Below are positions 16,420 through 28,906 of a stretch of 64,000 nt of DNA, piece after piece. Position numbers and translations under genes: made by a program. The DNA is from Asterias rubens (taxonomy: Eukaryota), in the NCBI RefSeq assembly GCF_902459465.1, contig NC_047062.1, forward strand, positions 4,836,001-4,900,000. Reading direction: 5' to 3'. The notes below the pieces were generated by a model. That model was given only the letters and a program-made list of their open reading frames with translations. It searched no databases and had not been told where the DNA came from. Each line of letters opens with the position of its first letter. Positions within the stretch are counted from its first letter, which is position 1.

Positions 16420-16559
16420 GTATAACGTACATTGTATGCCGAAACGGAGAATTCCCGTGCGGCGTGATTTTATAAGCGATAGGAAACGATGTTCTATGTT
16501 CCTCTAGTTTCTGCGTAAAATCATTCAGATCCACTTTTTAAAGCAAACAAATATGTTGG

Positions 16560-17260
16560 ATCATGACTTTGTAAACCCAATAGAAATACAAATTTGCGCG
16601 AGTTCTGATTAAAAAACACCCAAACTATTTAACCAAACCAATACAAAATTTATTGGTTTATTACTTTATAAACCCAATAGAAATACAAAATTGCTTAAGT
16701 TCTGATTAAAAAACACCCAAACTATTGAAACAAACCAATAAAAAATATGTTGGTTCATGACTTTTTAAACCCAATAAAAAAACAAATTTGCATAAGTTCT
16801 GTTAAAAAAAAAACTATTGAATGAAACAAACTAATAACAAATATATTGGTTCATTACTTTATAAACCCAATAGAAATACAAATTTGCGTAAGTTCTGATA
16901 CAAAAAAACACCTAATTAAAACAAACCAATTAAAAAATATTGGTTCATGACTTTTTAAATCCAATAGAAACAAAACAAAAACTAATTTAAACAAACCAAT
17001 AAACTATGAATTGGTTCATGACTTTTTAAACCCAATAGAAAATACAAATTTGCGTAAGTTCTTATTCTATTTTTCAGGGAAACAAAACTACAACTTATTC
17101 AAACAAACCAATGAAAAAATAGATTGGTTCATTACTTTTAACCCAAATACATATTTGTGCAAGTTCTGAGTATCTCTCTTCGAAACTAAACAAAAATGTT
17201 AACCAAACAAAAATACGTGTTTCATAACTTTTTTTTCCAACCCAGTACAATTTGTCCGAA
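16560..17260. repeat. AT-rich tandem repeat of about 100 bp in FKBP2-A intron 1
   Basis: Recurring AAACCCAATAGAAATACAAATTTG...AAACAAACCAAT unit, about 7 copies; absent from copy B. Confidence 0.85.
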
Positions 17261-17863
17261 GTTCTGATTAATTTTCCCAACCGAATTAACAATGATCCCT
17301 GTTGCGTAGATAAATGTATGATTATAAATAATATCATCAATATAAATAACCCAGCAGGCACACGACGTCTTTCTGACGTCATATTATGGTTGATTTTGAG
17401 TCGCGATGTCAGATTACCAAAAAGTGACTATAAATACAACGTCAGATTGGCGACAAGAATCAAACGTAAATTAATAACCTGGTATGGACGTCGTAAGATG
17501 GTCATGACTATGATAACTAAAATGTAACCGAAAATGAACGTTACATTTTAGGTAGATTTATAACTTAATGGTAACGTCATTGACCAGACGTTACTTAGAC
17601 GTAATTTTATTGTCATAGTCTAACCATCGTTTTATTACAACAGTCTGACCATAATAAGACGTTGCATTAATGAAATTGGGCACTGGTAAAGGTCTATACT
17701 GGGAATCTGGAATAATATATCATAGCTCTTGGTCATGTTCCTTTAATCTCGAGGGTTATGATGATCACACCAAGTAAAGGTCCAAATTTGTTATTAATCA
17801 TTCATTTTGACATTACTAATATAATAAAACATCTGTTTTTTTAGTTGAAGAGCAATTTCAAAG

Positions 17864-20325
17864 ATGGTATCTTTAAAGGTGGCGCTGACTGCTGGGATAG
17901 TTACATTCATCCTCATCGCCGGTCTTGTTGTTGTTGTTGTGGTGGTGGTTGAGGCTGGTGACAAGCCTAAGAAGCTCCAGATCGACGTCACGAAGAAGGT
18001 GGAGAACTGTGACCGGAGATCCAAAGTTGGTGATTCCTTGCATATGCATTACACAGTAAGGAAGAGAAAACCATTATTTTCTAGATCATGACTTGCCAAT
18101 GAATTATCCTACCTATGGTGTTCATGCACCTGTTTTGTCTATAAGGCTTTGATTTCTATTTTGCTTATTTTGTTTCGGTGTAATTTTTTCTTAGGGCATT
18201 TTGACTGTAATGTGCCCCAATATCACAGTGCGTTATATTCATGCCATAAGTCTGCACTTTACTTGGAAGAAGAATAGGCTGGTTCTGGAGAGAGAGCAAT
18301 AGAAATTCAAAAAATTATTTTAATTATTATATTTAGAAAGGTCCTGATACACACCATCTTTACAGCAACTGGGGTTTTGGACTATTATGAGCCGAACCAT
18401 TCACCCTTTGTGGACTTAACTTTATTTAGAGCCCACCATTAAAATTGGTCTAGCTACAGCACTGGTGGTCTGTTTTGTATTGACATCATATGGGTGCTGC
18501 AGAGATTTGGACACGTTGGTGTTTCTCAGCTGAACTTGTAAAATCCAGTTGGAAGTTTTTCAGGTTCTGATATTGAGGTTTATTTTAAGTCCAATTAATT
18601 ACTAAGCCATCAGCCAATAAATGTTTCTAACCTAAGATTTGTTTCCAATTTGATCTCTTGACTTTCTTTGTTTTTTGTGGTCCTTTAATTTATTGTATTT
18701 GTTTAAATCCAGGGCACACTAGAAGATGGAACCCAGTTTGACAGCAGCATTCCAAGGGGGAGTCCGTTTGTTTTTACTCTTGGCGCAGGCCAGGTGATCA
18801 AAGGCTGGGACGAGGGACTACTCAAGTGAGTATTCAGTAGCTTTAGGGCTTAATTGGTTTGGTGACACCTGTTGGAAGGTGTTCAATTTAGTTTCCTTGG
18901 TAATAAGCAAGTTGCTAGTGCATCTGTATCTTATTTGCACGTTCTCGTCATAGAGAGACCGGCTTTTGCTGGACTTTCTTTGCCTCAATGCTGCAGGCTT
19001 TGCCTGGTCTCATGTTTTCCCTCTTGGTTTTTGATTTCATTCAGATTGTTGTTGTTTTTTTTCTTGTTATTCTCTGAGTGCTTTGCAACCCATAGGAAAA
19101 GGTGCTTTATAAATGGTGTTGATATTATTATTACCATTGCACTCATAAACATTCATTATGTGTATAATATTGTTGATCATGATGCATGCAATAATTGTAT
19201 TTGTTCATTACACAATTTTCAGCATGTGTGTTGGAGAAAAGAGAAAACTAGTTATCCCATCTGATCTAGGATATGGAGACCGAGGATCACCTCCCAGAAT
19301 CAAAGGTGAGTGGCCCTCCCCTTTTATCTGTTATGAGGTATACTAAACAAACAGATTGATGATTTTCTTTTAAAGGCACTGGACACGTTTGATATAATAT
19401 GTCAAAGACCACCATTCTCACGTGGTGTATCCCAACATATGCATAAACTAAGCTGTGAAAATTGGACTCAACTGGTCCCATAGAAGTTACAATAGAGTAA
19501 TGGAGAGGTTTCGCAAGCGTACGGATACAGATACAGATACGGATATGATAACCGTATTTGTTCACGTCAACCGCGTATGGGATTTTGTTTCGCAAACTAT
19601 AGGCATGTTTCACTTGAGTGCGCTCGCATTCATAATGAGTGTTTTTCTGACAAACATGACCGAGAGACGCCGCATTTTATACACTGCACTTTCTCATCGT
19701 TTTGCTTGCAAATGACTATTAATTGTCTATATATCAAGCACGATACCAGTGAAAGCAATTCTGTGGGAAATGTTTTTGATCTGATTCAAAAAGACAACTA
19801 AAAGTCTGCAAAACAGTATCCGTTTTTGTACTACAGGTATGAGCTCCCGTATCCGTTGCTAACGTGTATTCAAAATACGATAGTCGGGGATACGCGTCAC
19901 GTGAACACACAAAGTGTCGACGTATCGGTATCTGTATGTGTATCCGACGCTTGCGAAACCTCTCTAAAGAAAGAAAAAATACCCTTGTTGTCAAAGTTTT
20001 TTGGCTTTCAGATGCCCTAGAAAAAACCTTCAGGCCCGGAGTCTTTCTCAGATTCAAATATTTGAGTGAGAAAATACCTCTTTATAAAAAAATTATGTTA
20101 CTTCAAAGGGAGTCGTTTCTCACTATGGCTTAACGGCTCTCTGTTGCTCGATACCAAGTAAATTTTTAGGCTAATATTTATTTCGAGTAATTACCAAACG
20201 TGTCCAGTGCCTTTAACATAAATGTTTACTTCGTGTAAAGTTGATAATAAAAATACTATCCTGCTTTGTTTTTTCCAGGGGGTGCTACTCTTGTCTTTGA
20301 AGTAGAGCTGATGAAAATTGGCTGA
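17864..20325 (+). CDS. FKBP2: FKBP2/FKBP13-like peptidyl-prolyl isomerase, copy A, 144 aa, lacking the C-terminal ER-retrieval motif
   Basis: Exons 17864-18055, 18713-18825, 19223-19305, 20279-20325; 435 nt. Signal-like N-terminus; FKBP motifs [58 protein letters not shown]-stop. Confidence 0.93.
19370..20216 (+). mobile_element. TTAA MITE family 1 in FKBP2-A intron, interrupted by a nested TIR element (19503-19964)
   Basis: TTAAAGGCACTGGACAC...GTGTCCAGTGCCTTTAA; nested element with TIR GAGAGGTTTCGCAAGCGT / ACGCTTGCGAAACCTCTC. Confidence 0.85.
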
Positions 20326-20653
20326 TGAAAATTGACCAAAGGGAGGAGCTATAACCAGTCCCCACCTGAGCTTAAAATCAAGCCTTATTTCTTAATTCTC
20401 AAACTAGAAGCATGGATAGCATTAGTGCAATGATTCGGTAGGGTTTTTCTATTTGAATCCTCTTGCTTCCTATAACAGGCATGCCACTTTTCAACTGATC
20501 AGCTGATTTCCTCTTTTTCTTTTCAAAAAAGTGCCTTAGAAAACTGAAAACACTGTATCAGCCATTTTTTTTTTTTTTAGAGAGTTGCATGTCTGAAATT
20601 AGAAAGTTGCATGTCTGAATTAAGCCGACAGAGAATACTTGTTTTCATACTCT

Positions 20654-21481
20654 TAGCCTGTAACACATAAATGGTGTTGATATTGAAATGGTCACTAAAC
20701 ATAAATACCTTGGGACTCACATTGATAGCCATTTAAATTGGAATGTTAATACACAGAAATTATGCTCTAAGGCTAATCAACGTTTGTATTTTTTAAGGAA
20801 ACTTAAGATTGTTAACATTGACCGGGATATTATCATGTTGTTTTACAAAAGCTGTAATTCAGTCTGTCATTGCGTCCTCTTGCATTGCATGGGCGAATGG
20901 TCTGTCTGTGGGTAATCAAAATAAAATCAACAGAATCACTAGATCTGCTAGTAAGCTCATTGGTATTCCTGTAAAAGACTTAGGTTCCATCTACGCGGCA
21001 GCTATATTGTCAAAACTCGAAAGTATACAACTTGATGATACCCACCCACTTCATACACCTTTTGTTTTTAATAAGTCTGGGAGATTGCGTCAACTCAAAT
21101 CCAACACTAATCGTCATCGTCTATCCTTCTTACCCAGTGCAATTTTCTATTTTAACAACAATTTTATTAGATAACTTGCTTCGTACTTCCCAATCCATGT
21201 CACCTACGGCCTCTCCCTCGTTCCCATGTATTGTCTTCCCACCCCTCCTACACCCTTCCTTCTCTCCTTTTCCCACCCCCTTTCCTTTCCAAGTCATCCT
21301 TAGTTTAGTTTCTGTTTTTATGTATATTAATTCCGTTGTATTTTAAACTATTTTTTTGTGCAATATGATATTTTTATTAGTGTTTTGTGCTATTTTTAAT
21401 GACTGTATTTTAATGTGCAATATCGGGGAAGTGATTTTCATGCTGGGCATGACGAATAACAAAATCTAATCTAATCTATCT
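20654..21481 (+). mobile_element. 5'-truncated non-LTR retrotransposon (L2/CR1-like RT C-terminus), frameshifted
   Basis: KHKYLGTHIDSHLNWNVNTQKLCSKANQRLYFLRKLK is a typical LINE RT C-terminal motif. A +1 A near 20857 breaks FYKAVIQSVI; the element ends in (ATCTA)n. It is absent at the paralogous site in FKBP2 copy B (about 27090). Confidence 0.85.
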
Positions 21482-22689
21482 AACATCATCAGTGTAAAAC
21501 TTGGTTGTGCCATGTTGAGAGTCATTGTAACCGTGTGTGATAATGGTGTAGTGTACATTTTAGGCCATGCAACTCTTAACTTACACACTTTGATTCCCAA
21601 AATTTGACTCCCAAAATGGCGAGCAGACAGAAGTAGAGTGTAATGTTGATGCAAAGGGTGAATAAGGGAAAGCACCGATGCTCAGTCAATGACTTTCAGA
21701 TGCTATATAGCAGAGATACAAATTCATATCCAGTTGTTGACATTTTGCACACTATTTTTTGAAACAATGAAATTGTTTAGTAAACAAGGTTCTATTTGTG
21801 ACTCCCAACAGTCTCCCAAAGAGATAAACAAAAACATTGATATTAGATTGAGTTCTTTACAAGGAGGGAAGAAACAATTACAGCTCAACAACATTATGAT
21901 ATATTACATTTTGCATTCATTCATTGTAATGTATCAAGGAGAATTGTCAAATTGTAGCAATAATATATTACGAGATCAGTTTTTGTATTGAATAAATATA
22001 AGAAAAGACCGAATTGACTTGGTCTTCCTCTATGGTGCAGATTGTTTGTATTGTCTCACTTGTAATATTATTGGTTTATATTCAGCAACAATTGTCAAGT
22101 TTGATAAATGAGTATTTTGTAATCAGCAAAACTACTACCTTTTTTTCATAAAAACAATTGAGGTTAATAAAAAGAAACTATGATTAATAACCAGAATGGT
22201 AAAAAGCGCGTTGGATTCCAGATTTTCTTAAAATTACCTTTTGATTGATTGATGTGTTTTTTTAGGGGGGGCACCCCCGTTGAGGTCATGGGCTTATTTT
22301 AAAGAAAAGGTCCAGCACAAACCTTGCCAGAAGTACCCACCAGACAAAAATGGTGCACCCCTTGTGTGCCCCTGTTACCCTAAAGAAAAAAAAAAAAAGA
22401 AAAAAATGTATTTTATCAAACTGACTCGGATTTGGCTCGGTATTTGCGGCCCATTTTTGTATTTATTTTTATTAGTTCAATATAATGTTTTGCTTAAAAA
22501 AAATTAAAAGTTAATAAATAAATATATTATCTATTAAAAAATTGTGTTTTATTGCTTAATATTGCAAAATTCGTTCGATTAAAATAACGGATTCCATATT
22601 TGAATCGAGCAAAATGCGAAATCTTGTCACCTCCCTGTACTGTATGTGTTCTATTTCCCGAATACGCGGCTGGTTTTTCCGGGAATACG

Positions 22690-22941: not shown

Positions 22942-23897
22942 GGGAATACGCGGCTGGCAATTTCGGGCCCAAAACCGTACCGCTAAGCTACGTGTACTTT
23001 TTCTTGGAGCTCTTTTGTTTCTGTGCTGGCCGGCCGCCGGAAGAACTAACTCAAAACTGCGGAAGGTAAGGGCCTCCATGGTTATATTATTTCGAGGCAA
23101 TTTATCAAGTAAAAAAACATTAGCATTTCCCTTTGTTCCTTTGTTTGATGCCTAACTGTGCTTTTTATTTAGGTTTCTCTTTTTCTAATTTTCTTGGTGG
23201 TGGTGGTGGTTCTCAGAATTTTTAATAAGCATTGTTTATGTTATTTTTTATGGATAACTTTCCGTATGGCGCCACCACTTTTTCACTCTTTTTTAGAAAA
23301 AGGAATGGGTAACTTTCCGTATGGCGCCACCACTTTTTCACTCATTTTTACAAAAAGGGATATATTAATCAGGTAAATTTGATACTAAATTATTTCAAAT
23401 CGAATGAAAAAGTGGTGGCGCCATACGGAAACTTTTCCAAAGGGATATCTCATTGAGGTAAATTAGATACTATATTATTTCATATCGAATGAAAAAGTGG
23501 TGACGCCATACAGAAACTTTTCCATATTATTCACAGGTTAGCAGAAAAACTAGGCGGCCATATTGCGTGTTTACAATGGATTCTCCATGGATTTGCATTG
23601 TGGCGTCATTTATTTTTATGCAGTAAGCCCTTTTGTGTGCTTATAATTAGCATCGCTATGAAATGGAAATCGCACAGTAATCACGAAATCGACCACTGAT
23701 CGAGCAGCTCTATGAAATTGGGCCCTGGTAAATGTCTATACTGGGAATCTGGAATAATAGCTCTTGGTCACGTTCCTTTAATCTCGAGGGTAAAACTAAG
23801 TAAAAGGTCCAAATATGTTATTAGGATCATTCATTTTGACATTTCTAAATACAATAAAATCATCTGTTTGTTTTCTAGTTGAAGAGCAATTTCAAAG

Positions 23898-26805
23898 ATG
23901 GCATCTTTAAAAATGGTGCTGAGTGCTGGGATGCTTTCGTTCATCCTCATCTCCTGCCTTGTTGTTGTTGAGGCTGGTGACAAGCCTAAGAAGCTCCAGA
24001 TCGGCGTCAAGAAGAAGGTGGAAAACTGTGACCGGAGATCCAAAGCTGGTGATTCCTTGCATATGCATTACACAGTAAGAAAGAAACAAAATCATCATCT
24101 AGATCTGAACTTGTGGATGAATTATCCCACTTAATATGGTGTTCATGCACCTTTTTTTTGTCTATATAAGGTTTTTATTTCCATTTTGCTTTTTAAATTT
24201 AAAGGCAGTGGACACTATTGGTAATTACTCAAAATAATTATTATCATAAAACCTTTCTTGATTACGAGTACTATGGAGAGGTTGTTAGTATAAAACATTG
24301 TGAGAAACGGCTCCCTCTGAAGTAATGCCTTAGGCAGTGGACACTATTGGTATTTACTAAAGCATAATTATTAACATAAAAACCTACTTCGTTTCGAGGA
24401 ACGGAGAGCTGTTTATAGTATAAAACATTGTGAGAAACGGCTCCCTCTGAAGTGACGTAGTTTTCAAGAAAGAAGTAATTTTTCACAAATTTGATTTTGA
24501 GACCTCAGATTTAGAATTTGAGGTCTGGAAATCAAGCATCTAAAAGCACACATATTCGTGTGACAAGTGTTTTTTCTTTCATTATTATCTCGCAATTTTG
24601 ACGACCGATTGAGCTCAATATTTTAGCAGGTTTGTTATTTTATGCATATGTTGAGATACACCAACTGTGAAGGCTAGTCTTTGACAATTTCCGATAGTGT
24701 CCAGTGTCTTTAACTGGTGTACTTTTCTTATACTGTTTCTTTGTAATTTCTAATAAATGCCATTTTTAGTTACAACAGACTGTTCCTGGAGAGAGTACAA
24801 TATGAATTCAATAGATTGTTTTATAGAAAGGTCCTGCTGATACACCACATCGATACATATGCATCTGATGTTTTGACTATTATGAGCTGAACCATTCACC
24901 CTTGGTGGACTTATGTTGATTTAGAGCCCACCATTAAAATTGGTCTAGGTACAGCACTGGTGGTATGTTTTGTATTGACATCATATGGGTGCTGTAGAGA
25001 TTTGGACTCGTTGGTGTTTCTCGGCTGAACTTGTAAAATTCAGTTGGAAGTTTTTCAGGTTCTGATGTTTGAGGTTTATTTTGAGTAATTACTGAGCCAT
25101 CAGCCAATAAATGTTTCCAACCCTACTTTTTTTCTAATTGATGACTTGACTTTTTAAAAAATTTTTATATATTGTTTTTTGTTTAATTCCAGGGCACACT
25201 ACAAGATGGAACCGAGTTTGACAGCAGCATTCCAAGGGGAAGTCCATTTGTTTTTACTCTTGGCGCAGGCCAGGTGATCAAAGGCTGGGACCAGGGCCTA
25301 CTCAAGTGAGTATTCAGTAGCTTTAGGTCTTAGACCATAGTGGCTGCAAGCGGCTTCAACCAAAATGCACAGAGAGGCTGCAAACAACTGCAAAATTTGA
25401 AGAAATTTTGCACAAATAAGAGGGTCAACAAAAAGGTATTGGACCGAATTGACAGTTTCCATTGTTTCCTGTGTAAACACATAATCTACAATGCTAAAAC
25501 AAAACCATGTATTTCTGATTCTTTTGAATTTCTTGACATTTTCCCTGAAAGTAACGGTGCAAAATATTAACAAGATTAGCAATGTCTGGGCTGGGCATAT
25601 GGTGATGATTATACAGAAATGAGTGGTCTCTAATGGTTAATTGGTTTGGTGACACGGTGACACCTGTTGGCAAGGTACTTCAATTTATTTTCCTTGGTAA
25701 TAAGAAAGTGCATCAGTATCTTATTTGTTAAAGGTACTGTACTTCTATTCACAATGTTGCTTAACATCAGCACAGAATTAGCCCTCTCACAGTTGTATAT
25801 CAACGTGCGTCGCAACTCACAGTATTTTAAATCTGGATGTTGTGGTTCTTCCATTGTTTTTCAAAATTATTATTATGTATTTGGCCAGTGAAACAAAAGA
25901 ACAACATACAGGCAGTAAAAATAACATCAAACTATTATTGGGTATGCAAGAAACTTGGCCAATGAAAGCACCCACGTATGGGTGGTCAAAGATTTGATCA
26001 ATTTGAAATGGGTCTCCTGGTTTGTGAAACCTTTTGAGAATGTATGTTTGTCACAGCACCATAGGAATCCACTGTATTCATTGTATTCACACTATGACTA
26101 TTATATCTGATAATATTACTGTATAATGTTGATCATGGTGCATGCAATGAATGTATTTGTTCATTACATAATTTTCAGCATGTGTGTTGGAGAGAAGAGA
26201 AAACTAGTTATCCCATCTGACCTAGGATATGGAGACCGGGGATCACCTCCCAAAATCCCAGGTGAGTGCCCCTCCCCCCCTTAATCTGTTTTGAGGTTAA
26301 CTAGACAAACATATTTATGAATTTCTTTTAAAGGCACTGGACACGTTTGGTAATTGTCAAAGACCAGTATTCTCACTTGGTGTATCCCAACATATGCATT
26401 AAGTAAGCTGTGAAAATTGGGCTTAATTGGTCATCAAAGTTAAAAGAAAGTAATAAAAAGAAAAAATACCCTTGTTGCCCAAGTTTTTGTGCTTTCAGAT
26501 GCCTTAAAAAGCTTCAGGCCCGAAGGCTTTCTCAGATTCAAATAATTTAGTGAGAAATTACCTCTTTCTTAAAAACTATGATTTCTCCGTTTCTCACATT
26601 GTATTATGGTATCAACTGCTCTCCGTTGCTTGATATCAAGTAAGTTTTTACGCTGATATTTATTTTGAGTAATTACCAAATGTGTCCAGTGCCTTCTGTG
26701 TGAAGTTAATGATGAAAATACTATCCTGTATCGTTTTTTCCAGGGGGTGCCACTCTTGTCTTCGAAGTAGAGCTGATGAAAATTGACAGGAAGAAGGAGC
26801 TATAA
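23898..26805 (+). CDS. FKBP2: FKBP2/FKBP13-like peptidyl-prolyl isomerase, copy B, 144 aa, ending in KKEL
   Basis: Exons 23898-24074, 25193-25305, 26179-26261, 26744-26805; 435 nt. Same intron positions as copy A; ends [13 protein letters not shown]-stop. Non-coding exon 1 donor at 23065/23066. Confidence 0.95.
24199..24713 (-). mobile_element. TTAA MITE family 1, specific to FKBP2-B, with an internal duplication of one end
   Basis: TTAA-bounded; GGCAGTGGACACTATTGG occurs twice; absent from the matching intron of copy A. Confidence 0.85.
26328..26695 (+). mobile_element. TTAA MITE family 1 in FKBP2-B intron (same site as 19370-20216)
   Basis: Same intron position as in copy A, so it predates the duplication. 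Confidence 0.8.
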
Positions 26806-28906
26806 CCAGTCCCCAGCTGAGCTTAAAATCAGGCCTTATTTCTTAATACTCAAAACTAGAAGCATTGATAGCATTAGTGCAATGACTCGGAAGGGTTTTT
26901 CTATTTGAATCCTCTTGCTTCCTGTATCATCTGCAAGTAACAGGCATGCACCTTTTCATTAAAAAAAAGTGCCATAGAAAACTGAAAAACACTAAAAAGG
27001 TTAATTGTGATCGGCAATTCCTCTCTCTTTTTTTTTGCAATTAGAAAGTTGCATGTCAAGTAAGCCGACAGACAAGGATTTATTCTCATACTCTCAACAT
27101 CATCATCAGTGTAAAACTTGGTTGTGCCATATTTGAGAGTCATTGTAACCGTGTGTTATAATGGTGTTGTGTACATTTTAGGCCATGCAACTCTTCACTC
27201 ACACACTTTGATTCCCAAAATTTGACTCCCAAAATGGCGAGCAGACAGAAGCAGAGTGTAATGTTGATGCAAAGGGTGAATAAGGGAAAGCACCGATGCT
27301 CAGTCAATGACTTTCAGATGCTATATAGCAGAGGTACAAATTAATTTTGCACACTATTTTTTTTGGAATAATGGAATTGTTTAGTAAATTAGGTTCCATT
27401 TGTGACTCCGACAGTCTGTCTCCCAAAGAGACGGTTTCATTAAGAGATAAACAGAGACATTGATATTAGATGGAGTTCTTTACAAGGAGAGAAGAAACAA
27501 AAGGGTTCTGTTTTACATTATTTTTGTCACCTTATCTCGATTGGAAGCAGTTACAGCTCAAGAACAGTTTACATTCTGCATTCATTTGTGGTAATGCATC
27601 AAGGAGAATTGTCCAATTGTAGCAATAATAATATTATGAGATCAGTTTTTGTATTGAATAAATATTGGAAGAGACTAAATTGATTTGGTCTTAGATCTTT
27701 AGACTCGAGTTCAGTCTTCCTCTTTGATGCGAATTGTTTGTGTTGTATCACTTTTAATATTATTGATTTATATTCATCAGCGATTCTCAAGTTTGATAAA
27801 AGAGTATTAAAACTACTACCTTTTTTCGTAAAAAAAATGAAGGCCAATAAAAAGAAACTACGATTGATAACCAGAATGGTAAAAGGCCTGTTGGATTCCA
27901 GATTTTTCTCAAATTAATTCCCTTCTGATTGATTTTTTTTATTTTTAGGAGGCACCCCGTTGAGGTCAAGGGCTTATTTTGAAGAAAAGGTTAAGCACAA
28001 ACCTTGCCAGAAGTGCCCACTAGACAAAAATGGTGCACCTGTTGTGTGCCCCTCTTACCCTAGCTACGCCGCTGTCCAATTCTAAGGAATAGGTCGACAA
28101 AAACTTGCATGGATATAATACATTGTATTGAAAATGTCACTGCCTCTAAAACATGGAAAACAGTTTCCGATTGTTTAAAATATTTATTTTGATCATCTGA
28201 AACCTTCATTGTTCGTTATTATGTAATTATAAAAACCACAAAATATATATATATATACTCTTGCACAAATGTTTTAGGCTGGGTAGGGGTAATTTCTATG
28301 GGATTTAATCTCTATAAACCCAAAATAAAAAGGTTCAAACATACAGGTTTTTAATCTCTGCGCTAACGTGCTATGTAAACCCTACAACATAAAAGGTCTG
28401 GCAATTAACCAGAAACAAATTGTTGGTTTCATACTGAAGGCCCCCTTTGATTACCAATCTCACACACAATTTCCATTTGAACCACTGTCAAAGTCGAGTA
28501 ATGGAAGTGGATTGAAGTGCCCCCAAATCACCGTTGTTCATTATGACTGTCAATGCAGGTACATGAATGAACATAAAATCCTTTTCGGAACATACATTTT
28601 TTGGTGTTTCCTTGAAAAAAGTTTACTTTGAGTTCATGAATAGAAATCGTTACACATTGAACTTAATGTACATAATGTACATGATGATGTATAAAAACAA
28701 AGATGAAAACTGGGATGTGTAGATGAGCTCGCTGGAGCTCGGCACACACTGGCATGTGACACATACTGGCAGAGTGCACAAGTGGCTGCACTCCAGGAAT
28801 GACAATTTCGTTAATTTATCCTCTCCTTGGTTTGAGTCCCACTCCAGTCAATCATCCTTTTGTTGTCACTTTTCTCCATTCATCAGCCAATAACAAACTG
28901 CTTCTC

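What the first reader, a model, noticed from the sequence alone, without database searches (positions are those of the whole stretch)
20301..20354. A 14-nt tandem duplication deletes the ER-retrieval signal of FKBP2 copy A
Seen: GCTGATGAAAATTG is duplicated (20307-20320, 20321-20334), giving ...MKIG-TGA. Without it the exon would read ...MKIDQREEL-stop; copy B ends ...MKIDRKKEL. Known: FKBP2 is kept in the ER lumen by a KDEL-like tail. Inference: copy A keeps an intact-looking PPIase domain but would escape the ER, so it may be a secreted or surface immunophilin, or a decaying duplicate.
Basis: partly seen in the sequence, partly recalled or inferred. Interest (0 to 1): 0.7.

Follow-up and report, generated by a model that had tools for sequence, protein, structure and literature searches.

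The report
Starfish FKBP2 duplicate lost ER tail
A real 14-base tandem duplication cuts the ER-retrieval tail off one of two neighbouring FKBP2 genes in a starfish; the sister species lost the same tail by a separate deletion, so this fast-evolving copy no longer needs the tail, though nobody has shown that its protein leaves the ER.

Summary
GCTGATGAAAATTG occurs twice in perfect tandem at 20307-20334, in the last exon of copy A. Copy A is the upstream gene of two tandem FKBP2 genes, which are about 90% identical, introns included. Copy A now ends ...MKIG-TGA. Without the second unit it would end ...MKIDQREEL.

- **Identity:** the copy A and copy B models equal two RefSeq "FKBP2-like" proteins of Asterias rubens.
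- **The duplication is real and expressed:** three public runs from three studies carry it without a difference. One is a spliced exon 3-exon 4 contig, so the mRNA is made.
- **It is derived:** copy B has one unit, and so do both copies in A. amurensis.
- **Independent loss:** the A. amurensis copy A lost the tail through a separate 93-nt deletion and ends ...DQRKEGFSN.
- **The tail is normally conserved:** 159 of 163 FKBP2-like proteins compared end in -EL or -DL.
- **Rates differ sharply:** copy B is identical in protein between the two species (0 N : 6 S). Copy A has 12 N : 7 S (omega about 0.5-0.7) and changes at near-invariant sites. Its domain ORF, start codon and splice sites are intact in both species.

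My best reading is a still-coding, fast-evolving paralogue freed from KDEL-receptor retrieval. Escape from the ER is an inference: tagged human FKBP2 without its tail stayed in the ER.

The parts
20307..20320 (+). First copy of the 14-nt unit GCTGATGAAAATTG. It encodes part of ...E-L-M-K-I.
20321..20334 (+). Second, inserted copy of the 14-nt unit. It shifts the frame, giving Gly (20320-20322) and then TGA.
   Evidence: Absent from copy B and from both A. amurensis copies.
20323..20325 (+). New stop codon TGA of copy A, lying inside the duplicated unit.
   Evidence: The model equals P0270.
20334..20354 (+). Former tail codons GAC CAA AGG GAG GAG CTA TAA (DQREEL-stop). They are now out of frame and form 3' UTR.
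20349..20441 (+). Stretch that is deleted (93 nt) in the A. amurensis orthologue of copy A: the Leu codon, the stop codon and 87 nt of 3' UTR. It is present here.
17864..18055 (+). Copy A exon 1: start codon, hydrophobic N-terminal segment, and the start of the FKBP domain.
   Evidence: GT donor.
17927..17950 (+). (GTT/GTG)8 run encoding eight Val. This is 5 more than in copy B. It makes a 24-residue uncharged segment, shared with A. amurensis copy A.
18713..18825 (+). Copy A exon 2 (FKBP_C core, [12 protein letters not shown]...WDEGLL).
   Evidence: Pfam PF00254, E 3.4e-12
19223..19305 (+). Copy A exon 3 (MCVGEKRKL...SPPRIK). It carries the rubens-specific changes K127R and P129K in the 80s loop.
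20279..20325 (+). Copy A exon 4, coding part ([14 protein letters not shown]-stop).
   Evidence: spliced contig of X26
23898..24074 (+). Copy B exon 1.
25193..25305 (+). Copy B exon 2.
26179..26261 (+). Copy B exon 3.
26744..26806 (+). Copy B exon 4 with the intact tail ...MKIDRKKEL-stop and a single 14-nt unit.
   Evidence: The model equals P0190.

Best explanation
Shown: the window carries a tandem pair of FKBP2 genes whose proteins are identical to two RefSeq proteins of Asterias rubens. In copy A a 14-nt tandem duplication shifts the frame of the last exon. The duplication has the form expected of replication slippage (inferred). It is specific to this lineage. The protein now ends ...VELMKIG instead of ...[12 protein letters not shown]. 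The stop lies in the last exon. The mRNA is made and spliced. The full FKBP domain is kept. Inferred: copy A is still a protein-coding gene. It is a young, fast-evolving paralogue that no longer needs, or no longer tolerates, the C-terminal xxEL signal read by the KDEL receptor. Its sister-species orthologue lost the same signal by an independent 93-nt deletion, while the domain, start codon and splice sites stayed intact in both species. Without the signal the protein is not a KDEL-receptor client. It is therefore expected to move beyond the ER. It would be secreted if its signal peptide is cleaved. It would be tethered as a type II membrane protein if the unusually long 24-residue hydrophobic N-terminus acts as an uncleaved signal-anchor. 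Whether the loss was selected or merely tolerated is open.
For: - **Duplication present and derived:**
- **Independent support and transcription:** contigs of X1, X3 and X26 span the site with 0 differences. X26 carries the exon 3-exon 4 joint. The genome has only two places matching this exon, so the spliced contig is not a retrocopy. Several small RNA-like runs from five studies hold the last exon and 3' UTR.
- **Identity:** A = XP_033647707.1 and B = XP_033647697.1.
- **Independent tail loss in A. amurensis:** P0350 ends DQRKEGFSN because of a 93-nt deletion.
- **Tail normally under strong constraint:** 159 of 163 FKBP2-like proteins end in -EL or -DL. The starfish outgroups end in RKKEL.
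- **Domain kept:** every invariant column of a 26-protein alignment is retained. The best PDB match is human FKBP2 4nnr at 2e-53. In the AF2 model the last strand spans residues 134-143.
- **ORF maintenance:** P is about 0.01-0.03 for an intact domain ORF, ATG and splice sites in both species if evolution has been neutral since speciation, and 0.0004-0.006 if neutral since the duplication.
- **Both ORF-changing lesions fall in the last 7 codons of about 150.**
- **N-terminal segment:** it is the longest and most hydrophobic of 25 FKBP2 proteins compared. The length of the h-region is the obvious difference between signal peptides and signal-anchors (PMC2120157).
Against: - **No localisation or secretome data exist for this protein**.
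- **Human precedent against escape:** tagged human FKBP2 remained in the ER after deletion of RTEL (PMC2140024, Table I).
- **Near-neutral protein evolution in copy A:** between the two species NG86 omega is 0.54 for the whole protein and 0.67 for the mature part. By parsimony the terminal branches have 11 N: 3 S, which does not differ from neutrality (p = 0.70). Coding divergence of 4.4% is similar to the intron divergence.
- **Changes at near-invariant FKBP2 positions:** G41D, K43T, E72Q/K, Q98E, K127R and P129K.
- **Possibly low expression:** in X26 the copy-A-specific contig has a much lower k-mer depth (about 296) than a contig carrying a copy-B state (about 7000). The tool warns that depth cannot rank genes.
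- **The ORF-survival simulation is crude:** its indel rate comes from introns, and the counts are small.
Confidence: 0.45

Rival explanations
1. Copy A is functional but still resident in the ER. On this view the tail is redundant for this paralogue. Retention would come from binding to other ER residents, or from a membrane-anchoring N-terminal segment. The tail then decayed neutrally in both species, with no change of compartment.
For: Human FKBP2, FKBP7 and FKBP14 stayed in the ER after their tails were deleted (PMC2140024, Table I). The +5 Val expansion predates the species split and gives a 24-residue hydrophobic segment that could tether the protein. My rough estimate puts two independent neutral losses of a 6-codon tail at about 0.09, which is not very improbable.
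Against: The tail is kept in 159 of 163 FKBP2-like proteins, so retrieval matters in vivo for ordinary FKBP2. The human assay used over-expressed tagged protein and immunofluorescence, which would miss slow leakage. Copy A also changed several otherwise invariant surface positions, which suggests a changed role.
Confidence: 0.25
2. Copy A is a decaying duplicate. It is transcribed, but its protein is no longer useful. The tail lesions are simply the first ORF-altering hits.
For: On terminal branches omega cannot be told from 1 (11 N: 3 S, p = 0.70), against 0 N: 4 S for copy B (Fisher p = 0.011). Coding divergence is about equal to intron divergence. There are substitutions at near-invariant sites, including P129K in the 80s loop. 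The protein branch is about 45 times longer than that of copy B. A spare intact copy B sits 6 kb away.
Against: Two independent lesions both spare the domain. By my arithmetic a random ORF-hitting lesion falls in the last 7 codons about 5% of the time, and about 2.6% of the time for a 93-nt deletion. There is no stop, frameshift, lost ATG or lost splice site in either species. The mRNA is spliced correctly. Pairwise omega of A against B is 0.28-0.37, which is below 1.
Confidence: 0.22
3. The duplication is an assembly or sequencing artefact, or a rare allele of the sequenced individual.
For: One of the DNA runs that shows it may be the source of the assembly. 15 indel rows of the read table were not displayed.
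Against: Contigs from three runs filed under three organism labels and three studies carry it with 0 differences. One of these is a spliced RNA contig. The RefSeq protein model carries the same end. The contig depth at the site in X1 (188.6) is not half that of its neighbours (130-161), so there is no sign of heterozygosity.
Confidence: 0.03

Closest known systems
Human FKBP2 (FKBP13), an ER-lumenal FK506-binding prolyl isomerase (PDB 4nnr, 2pbc)
   Same: It has an N-terminal targeting sequence followed by one FKBP_C domain. It is the best PDB match, at E 2e-53 over residues 21-143. All columns that are invariant in 26 animal FKBP2 proteins are kept. Copy B also keeps the xxEL tail (KKEL, against RTEL in human).
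   Different: Copy A ends at the last strand of the domain (..MKIG) and has no xxEL tail. Its hydrophobic N-terminal segment is longer (24 residues). It differs at six near-invariant positions.
Calreticulin exon-9 frameshift mutants: small insertions or deletions that remove KDEL, after which the protein leaves the ER
   Same: A short frameshifting indel in the last exon removes the C-terminal retrieval signal of a soluble ER protein. The folded body stays intact. The abstract of PMC13040144 states that mutant CALR loses KDEL and is released extracellularly.
   Different: Those are somatic disease mutations in a single-copy gene, and they create a long new tail with a new function. Here the change is germline, apparently fixed, sits in a spare paralogue and adds one residue only. 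No export or new function has been shown.
MANF and CDNF: secretory proteins with weak KDEL-like tails (RTDL, QTEL/KTEL)
   Same: These are ER-targeted proteins in which the strength of the C-terminal signal sets the balance between retention and secretion (PMC4731063 abstract).
   Different: The fold and family are unrelated. They keep a weak signal, whereas copy A has none.

Membership tests
FKBP2/FKBP13 subfamily of FKBP-type prolyl isomerases | FKBP_C domain (Pfam PF00254) | tested here: met
   Exon 2 alone scores E 3.4e-12, 47 bits. PF00254 is precomputed for P0270. The own-genome scan hits both loci.
FKBP2/FKBP13 subfamily of FKBP-type prolyl isomerases | Closest relatives are FKBP2 proteins rather than other FKBP paralogues | tested here: met
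   The best PDB hit is human FKBP2 at 2e-53, against about 1e-29 for FKBP12-type proteins. In the tree copy A is sister to Asterias copy B inside the asteroid FKBP2 clade.
FKBP2/FKBP13 subfamily of FKBP-type prolyl isomerases | Ligand-pocket and catalytic residues conserved (equivalents of FKBP12 Y26, F36, D37, R42, F46, V55, I56, W59, Y82, I91, F99) | tested here: met
   Y63, F73, D74, R79, V92, I93, W96, Y119, I128 and F136 are invariant columns that include copy A, and F83 is nearly invariant and kept. The mapping onto FKBP12 numbering is from my own knowledge. No activity assay was possible.
FKBP2/FKBP13 subfamily of FKBP-type prolyl isomerases | N-terminal cleavable signal peptide | tested here: inconclusive
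   A hydrophobic N-terminal segment is present, followed by V-E-A|G. At 24 uncharged residues it is unusually long. No signal-peptide predictor was available.
Soluble ER residents retrieved by the KDEL receptor | C-terminal KDEL-like tetrapeptide (PROSITE [KRHQSA]-[DENQ]-E-L, or a variant ending -EL, -DL or -EF) | tested here: not met
   Copy A ends MKIG. The A. amurensis orthologue ends GFSN. Copy B ends KKEL. The -3 position tolerates any residue except Pro (PMC2140024).
Unprocessed pseudogene | Disabling mutation inside the domain, or lost start codon or splice sites | tested here: not met
   All exons are open, all introns are GT-AG and the ATG is present in both species.
Unprocessed pseudogene | Neutral protein evolution (omega = 1) | tested here: inconclusive
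   Omega between the A orthologues is 0.54-0.67. The terminal branches have 11 N: 3 S, which does not differ from neutral. A against B gives 0.28-0.37.
Unprocessed pseudogene | Not transcribed or not spliced | tested here: not met
   A spliced exon 3-exon 4 contig in X26 carries the duplication.

The most novel reading that the evidence does not exclude
After a tandem duplication in the Asterias lineage, one FKBP2 copy was turned from an ER-lumenal folding helper into an exported immunophilin. First an in-frame Val expansion lengthened its targeting sequence, possibly into a membrane anchor. Then selection removed the ER-retrieval tail twice, independently: by a 14-nt duplication in A. rubens and by a 93-nt deletion in A. 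amurensis. Surface residues evolved fast throughout. This would be a natural, repeated case of relocalisation by tail loss.
Probability: 0.2. Interest if true: 0.6.

Novelty: new variant of a known kind. Interest (0 to 1): 0.4.

Why it matters
Loss or gain of short sorting signals is a simple way for a gene duplicate to acquire a new cellular address, but clean natural examples are few. Here the same 4-6 residue signal was removed twice, by different mutations, in sister species. An unchanged partner gene next door serves as a control. That makes the idea directly testable with two proteins and two species. If the protein does leave the ER, it would be a secreted or surface FKBP in an echinoderm. 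If it does not, the case shows that the conserved FKBP2 tail can become dispensable. Either way it is a modest evolutionary finding, not a new kind of system. Both genes are already annotated as 'FKBP2-like'.

Tried and rejected
- **Representatives search with exon 1 of copy B**. It returned mostly exon-sized fragments. Its only use was to supply a full-length echinoderm-like FKBP2 (P0070) as a query.
- **Reads**.
  - All runs were contigs, so starts, ends and expression levels cannot be read from them.
  - Run X5 could not be resolved at the site. It matches A. amurensis at 17 of 20 variant positions, and the A. amurensis assembly answered that question instead.
  - The 22-letter exon-3 side of the X26 joint is not printed, so assigning it to copy A rests on the perfect copy-A match of the other 171 letters and on the contig's k-mer continuity.
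- **Paper searches** for the RefSeq accession and for starfish proteomes with prolyl isomerases found nothing relevant.
- **Artefact or heterozygosity** was rejected; see the rival explanations.
- **Retrocopy as the source of the spliced contig** was rejected, because the genome has only two matches to this exon.
- **A third FKBP2 copy** was rejected.
- **Rescue of the frame by alternative splicing** found no support. The RNA contig is collinear with the genome through the duplication and the stop.
- **AF2 model**. Its confidence is only moderate (mean pLDDT 75.9). I used it only for the extent of the secondary structure and ran no fold search.
- **Not available:** a signal-peptide or anchor predictor, and PAML-type branch models. 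I substituted Nei-Gojobori counts, parsimony counts and a crude simulation.
Full report
**1. The observation**

The stretch 20307-20334 is GCTGATGAAAATTG twice in perfect tandem (TRF: period 14, 2.0 copies, 100% match). A perfect 14-mer tandem repeat is expected about 2e-4 times by chance in 64 kb (my arithmetic). More tellingly, three homologous sequences carry the unit once.

**2. The genes**

Six-frame translation and repeat analysis show two FKBP2-like genes on the + strand. They lie in a tandemly duplicated block, about 17700-22400 and 23700-28060, that is 85-97% identical including introns.

Exon models with GT-AG introns:

| Copy | Exon 1 | Exon 2 | Exon 3 | Exon 4 |
|---|---|---|---|---|
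| A | 17864-18055 | 18713-18825 | 19223-19305 | 20279-20325 |
| B | 23898-24074 | 25193-25305 | 26179-26261 | 26744-26806 |

- Copy A gives 144 aa ending ...VELMKIG, with stop TGA at 20323-20325.
- Copy B gives 144 aa ending ...[12 protein letters not shown].
- Without the second unit copy A would end ...MKIDQREEL, with stop at 20352-20354.
- Exon 2 of both copies matches Pfam FKBP_C (E about 3e-12).
- The whole genome (417.6 Mb, 150 contigs; the window is C1:4836001-4900000) has only these two FKBP2 loci.

**3. Identity**

I reached full-length database proteins without typing sequences.

- The copy B model equals P0190. This sequence is listed as 'FKBP2-like' for both Asterias rubens (XP_033647697.1) and A. 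amurensis (XP_071788469.1).
- The copy A model equals P0270 (XP_033647707.1, A. rubens).
- Both equalities were checked by script.
- The window is therefore from A. rubens or something indistinguishable from it. The truncated end is already in the public annotation, though not remarked on.

**4. Is the duplication real and expressed?**

Logan contigs of four runs were laid on 17700-21200.

- X1 (DNA) has a 205-nt contig over 20191-20395 with 0 differences and 0 gaps.
- X3 has a 181-nt contig over 20191-20371, also with 0 differences and 0 gaps.
- X26 has a 193-nt contig whose last 171 letters match 20277-20447 perfectly. Its first 22 letters lie at the end of exon 3, with a joint from 19303 to 20277 (GT..AG).
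- The genome has no third copy of this exon. That contig must therefore come from spliced RNA of copy A, duplication included.
- The three runs carry three organism labels and come from three studies. One of the DNA runs may be the assembly's own sample.
- The contig depth in X1 at the site is not halved relative to its neighbours, so there is no sign of heterozygosity.
- Small RNA-like runs from five studies hold the last exon and 3' UTR.
- In X26 a contig across exons 2-3 carries the copy-B state at 18812 and has a far higher k-mer depth than the copy-A contig (about 7000 against about 296). This hints at lower expression of copy A, but the tool warns against ranking genes by depth.

**5. 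The sister species**

The 90% cluster of copy A contains the A. amurensis orthologue P0350 (152 aa), which ends ...MKIDQRKEGFSN. I fetched its locus as L001.

- A. amurensis copy A, and copy B of both species, have one 14-nt unit each. The duplication therefore arose on the A. rubens side after the species split.
- A. amurensis copy A has its own lesion: a 93-nt deletion equivalent to window 20349-20441.
- That deletion removes the Leu codon, the stop codon and 87 nt of 3' UTR, and reads on into EGFSN-stop.
- Two different mutations in two species thus destroy the same C-terminal motif and nothing else.
- Run X5 matches A. amurensis at 17 of 20 variant sites, so its organism label is probably that species or a close relative.

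**6. How conserved is the tail?**

- Two of the four exceptions are the copy A orthologues.
- The starfish outgroups (Acanthaster, Patiria and two unnamed asteroid proteins) end in RKKEL, like copy B.
- FKBP13's RTEL is regarded as its ER-retention signal (PMC2132710).
- In the reporter study of Raykhel et al. the -3 position accepts any residue but Pro, so KKEL and REEL are plausible signals (PMC2140024).
- The same paper's Table I reports that tagged human FKBP2 was in the ER both with RTEL and with it deleted. Loss of the tail therefore need not cause visible relocation.

**7. Rates of change**

| Comparison (call) | Copy A | Copy B |
|---|---|---|
| Between the two species, Nei-Gojobori (35) | 7 synonymous, 12 non-synonymous; dS 0.070, dN 0.038; omega 0.54 (mature part 0.67) | 6 synonymous, 0 non-synonymous |
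| Terminal branches, parsimony (36) | 11 N : 3 S; not different from neutral (p = 0.70) | 0 N : 4 S |

- The two terminal-branch counts differ from each other (Fisher p = 0.011).
- Intron divergence between the species is 2.6-10%, with about one small indel per 8.5 substitutions. Copy A's coding divergence of 4.4% is therefore close to neutral.
- In a 26-protein alignment copy A differs at near-invariant positions. G41D, K43T, E72Q/K and Q98E occur in both species. K127R and P129K occur in A. rubens only and lie in the 80s loop.
- Every fully invariant column is kept, pocket residues included.
- A protein tree places A and B together, as sister to another asteroid protein. The A stem is 0.13 and its tips 0.04-0.05, against 0.004 for B.
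- The duplication is therefore young and confined to the Asterias lineage. It is older than the rubens/amurensis split: dS between A and B is 0.13-0.17, against 0.065-0.07 between orthologues.

**8. Decay or function?**

- Near-neutral amino-acid change argues for relaxation.
- Against full neutrality, neither species has a stop, a frameshift, a lost ATG or a lost splice site in the domain.
- A crude simulation used the intron-derived rates. It gives 0.01-0.03 for that outcome in both species if copy A has been neutral since speciation. It gives 0.0004-0.006 if neutral since the duplication.
- The only two ORF-changing lesions fall within the last 7 of about 150 codons. A random lesion would do so about 5% of the time, and a random 93-nt deletion about 2.6% of the time (my arithmetic).
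- I conclude, with moderate confidence, that the domain is still under selection while the tail is not.

**9. Mechanism**

- *Shown:* the frameshift, the new stop in the last exon, the spliced mRNA, and a complete FKBP domain. In the AF2 model the last strand spans residues 134-143. FKBP12-type domains in the PDB matches end at the equivalent position.
- *Inferred:* the protein enters the ER through its hydrophobic N-terminus, cannot be recognised by the KDEL receptor, and so can travel onward.
- *A further clue:* an in-frame (GTT/GTG) expansion at 17927-17950 adds five Val. It is shared by both species and so is older than the tail losses.
- That expansion makes a 24-residue uncharged segment, the longest and most hydrophobic of 25 FKBP2 proteins compared.
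- The length of the hydrophobic region is the obvious difference between cleaved signal peptides and signal-anchors (PMC2120157). Copy A may therefore be membrane-tethered, which could itself have made the tail dispensable. This was not testable here.

**10. Comparison and novelty**

Copy A is an FKBP2-derived paralogue. It meets the domain, kinship and pocket criteria but fails the ER-resident criterion of a C-terminal retrieval signal. The nearest mechanistic analogue is the calreticulin frameshift that removes KDEL and lets the protein leave the cell (PMC13040144 abstract). That case is somatic and pathological. I found no paper on these starfish genes. I rate the finding a new variant of a known kind, of moderate interest. 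The independent second loss is the part a specialist would notice.

**11. Verdict**

- 'Decaying duplicate' is less likely than 'fast-evolving, tail-less, still-coding paralogue'.
- Export from the ER remains an untested inference, with published counter-evidence from the human protein.

Noticed in passing
window 17927-17950: An in-frame (GTT/GTG)8 run gives eight Val in copy A's N-terminal segment, five more than in copy B. It is shared with A. amurensis copy A. The resulting 24-residue uncharged stretch is the longest and most hydrophobic of 25 FKBP2 proteins compared, and it may act as a signal-anchor.
   Followed up: partly
window 16512-17153: A tandem array of about seven 97-nt units lies just upstream of copy A, outside the block shared with copy B.
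   Followed up: no
window 20577-20619: A second slippage-type tandem duplication (22 nt x 2, 95% match) sits in the 3' UTR of copy A, about 250 nt downstream of the 14-nt one.
   Followed up: no
window 21515-21727 and 27133-27345: A 213-nt block downstream of the two genes is 97% identical between the copies. The rest of the duplicated unit is about 85-93% identical. This may be gene conversion or a young repeat.
   Followed up: no
window 19104-19220, 19338-19454, 20040-20273: Stretches of introns 2 and 3 of copy A have very high k-mer depth (1e4 to 8e5) in all four runs, so they are high-copy repeats, probably transposon fragments. Many spurious joints map there.
   Followed up: no
window 18734 (codon 72), 19299-19301 (codon 129); L001 copy A codon 81: Codon 72 has three states: E in copy B and the outgroups, Q in rubens A, and K in amurensis A. 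Two double-nucleotide codon changes both produce Lys: P129K in rubens A and S81K in amurensis A.
   Followed up: partly
window 23898-26806 and L001 18914-22729: The copy B protein is identical in the two Asterias species, with 6 synonymous differences and no amino-acid change.
   Followed up: yes
L001 2145-3941 (minus strand): In A. amurensis an LSM-domain gene lies upstream of copy A. Synteny with this window was not compared.
   Followed up: no
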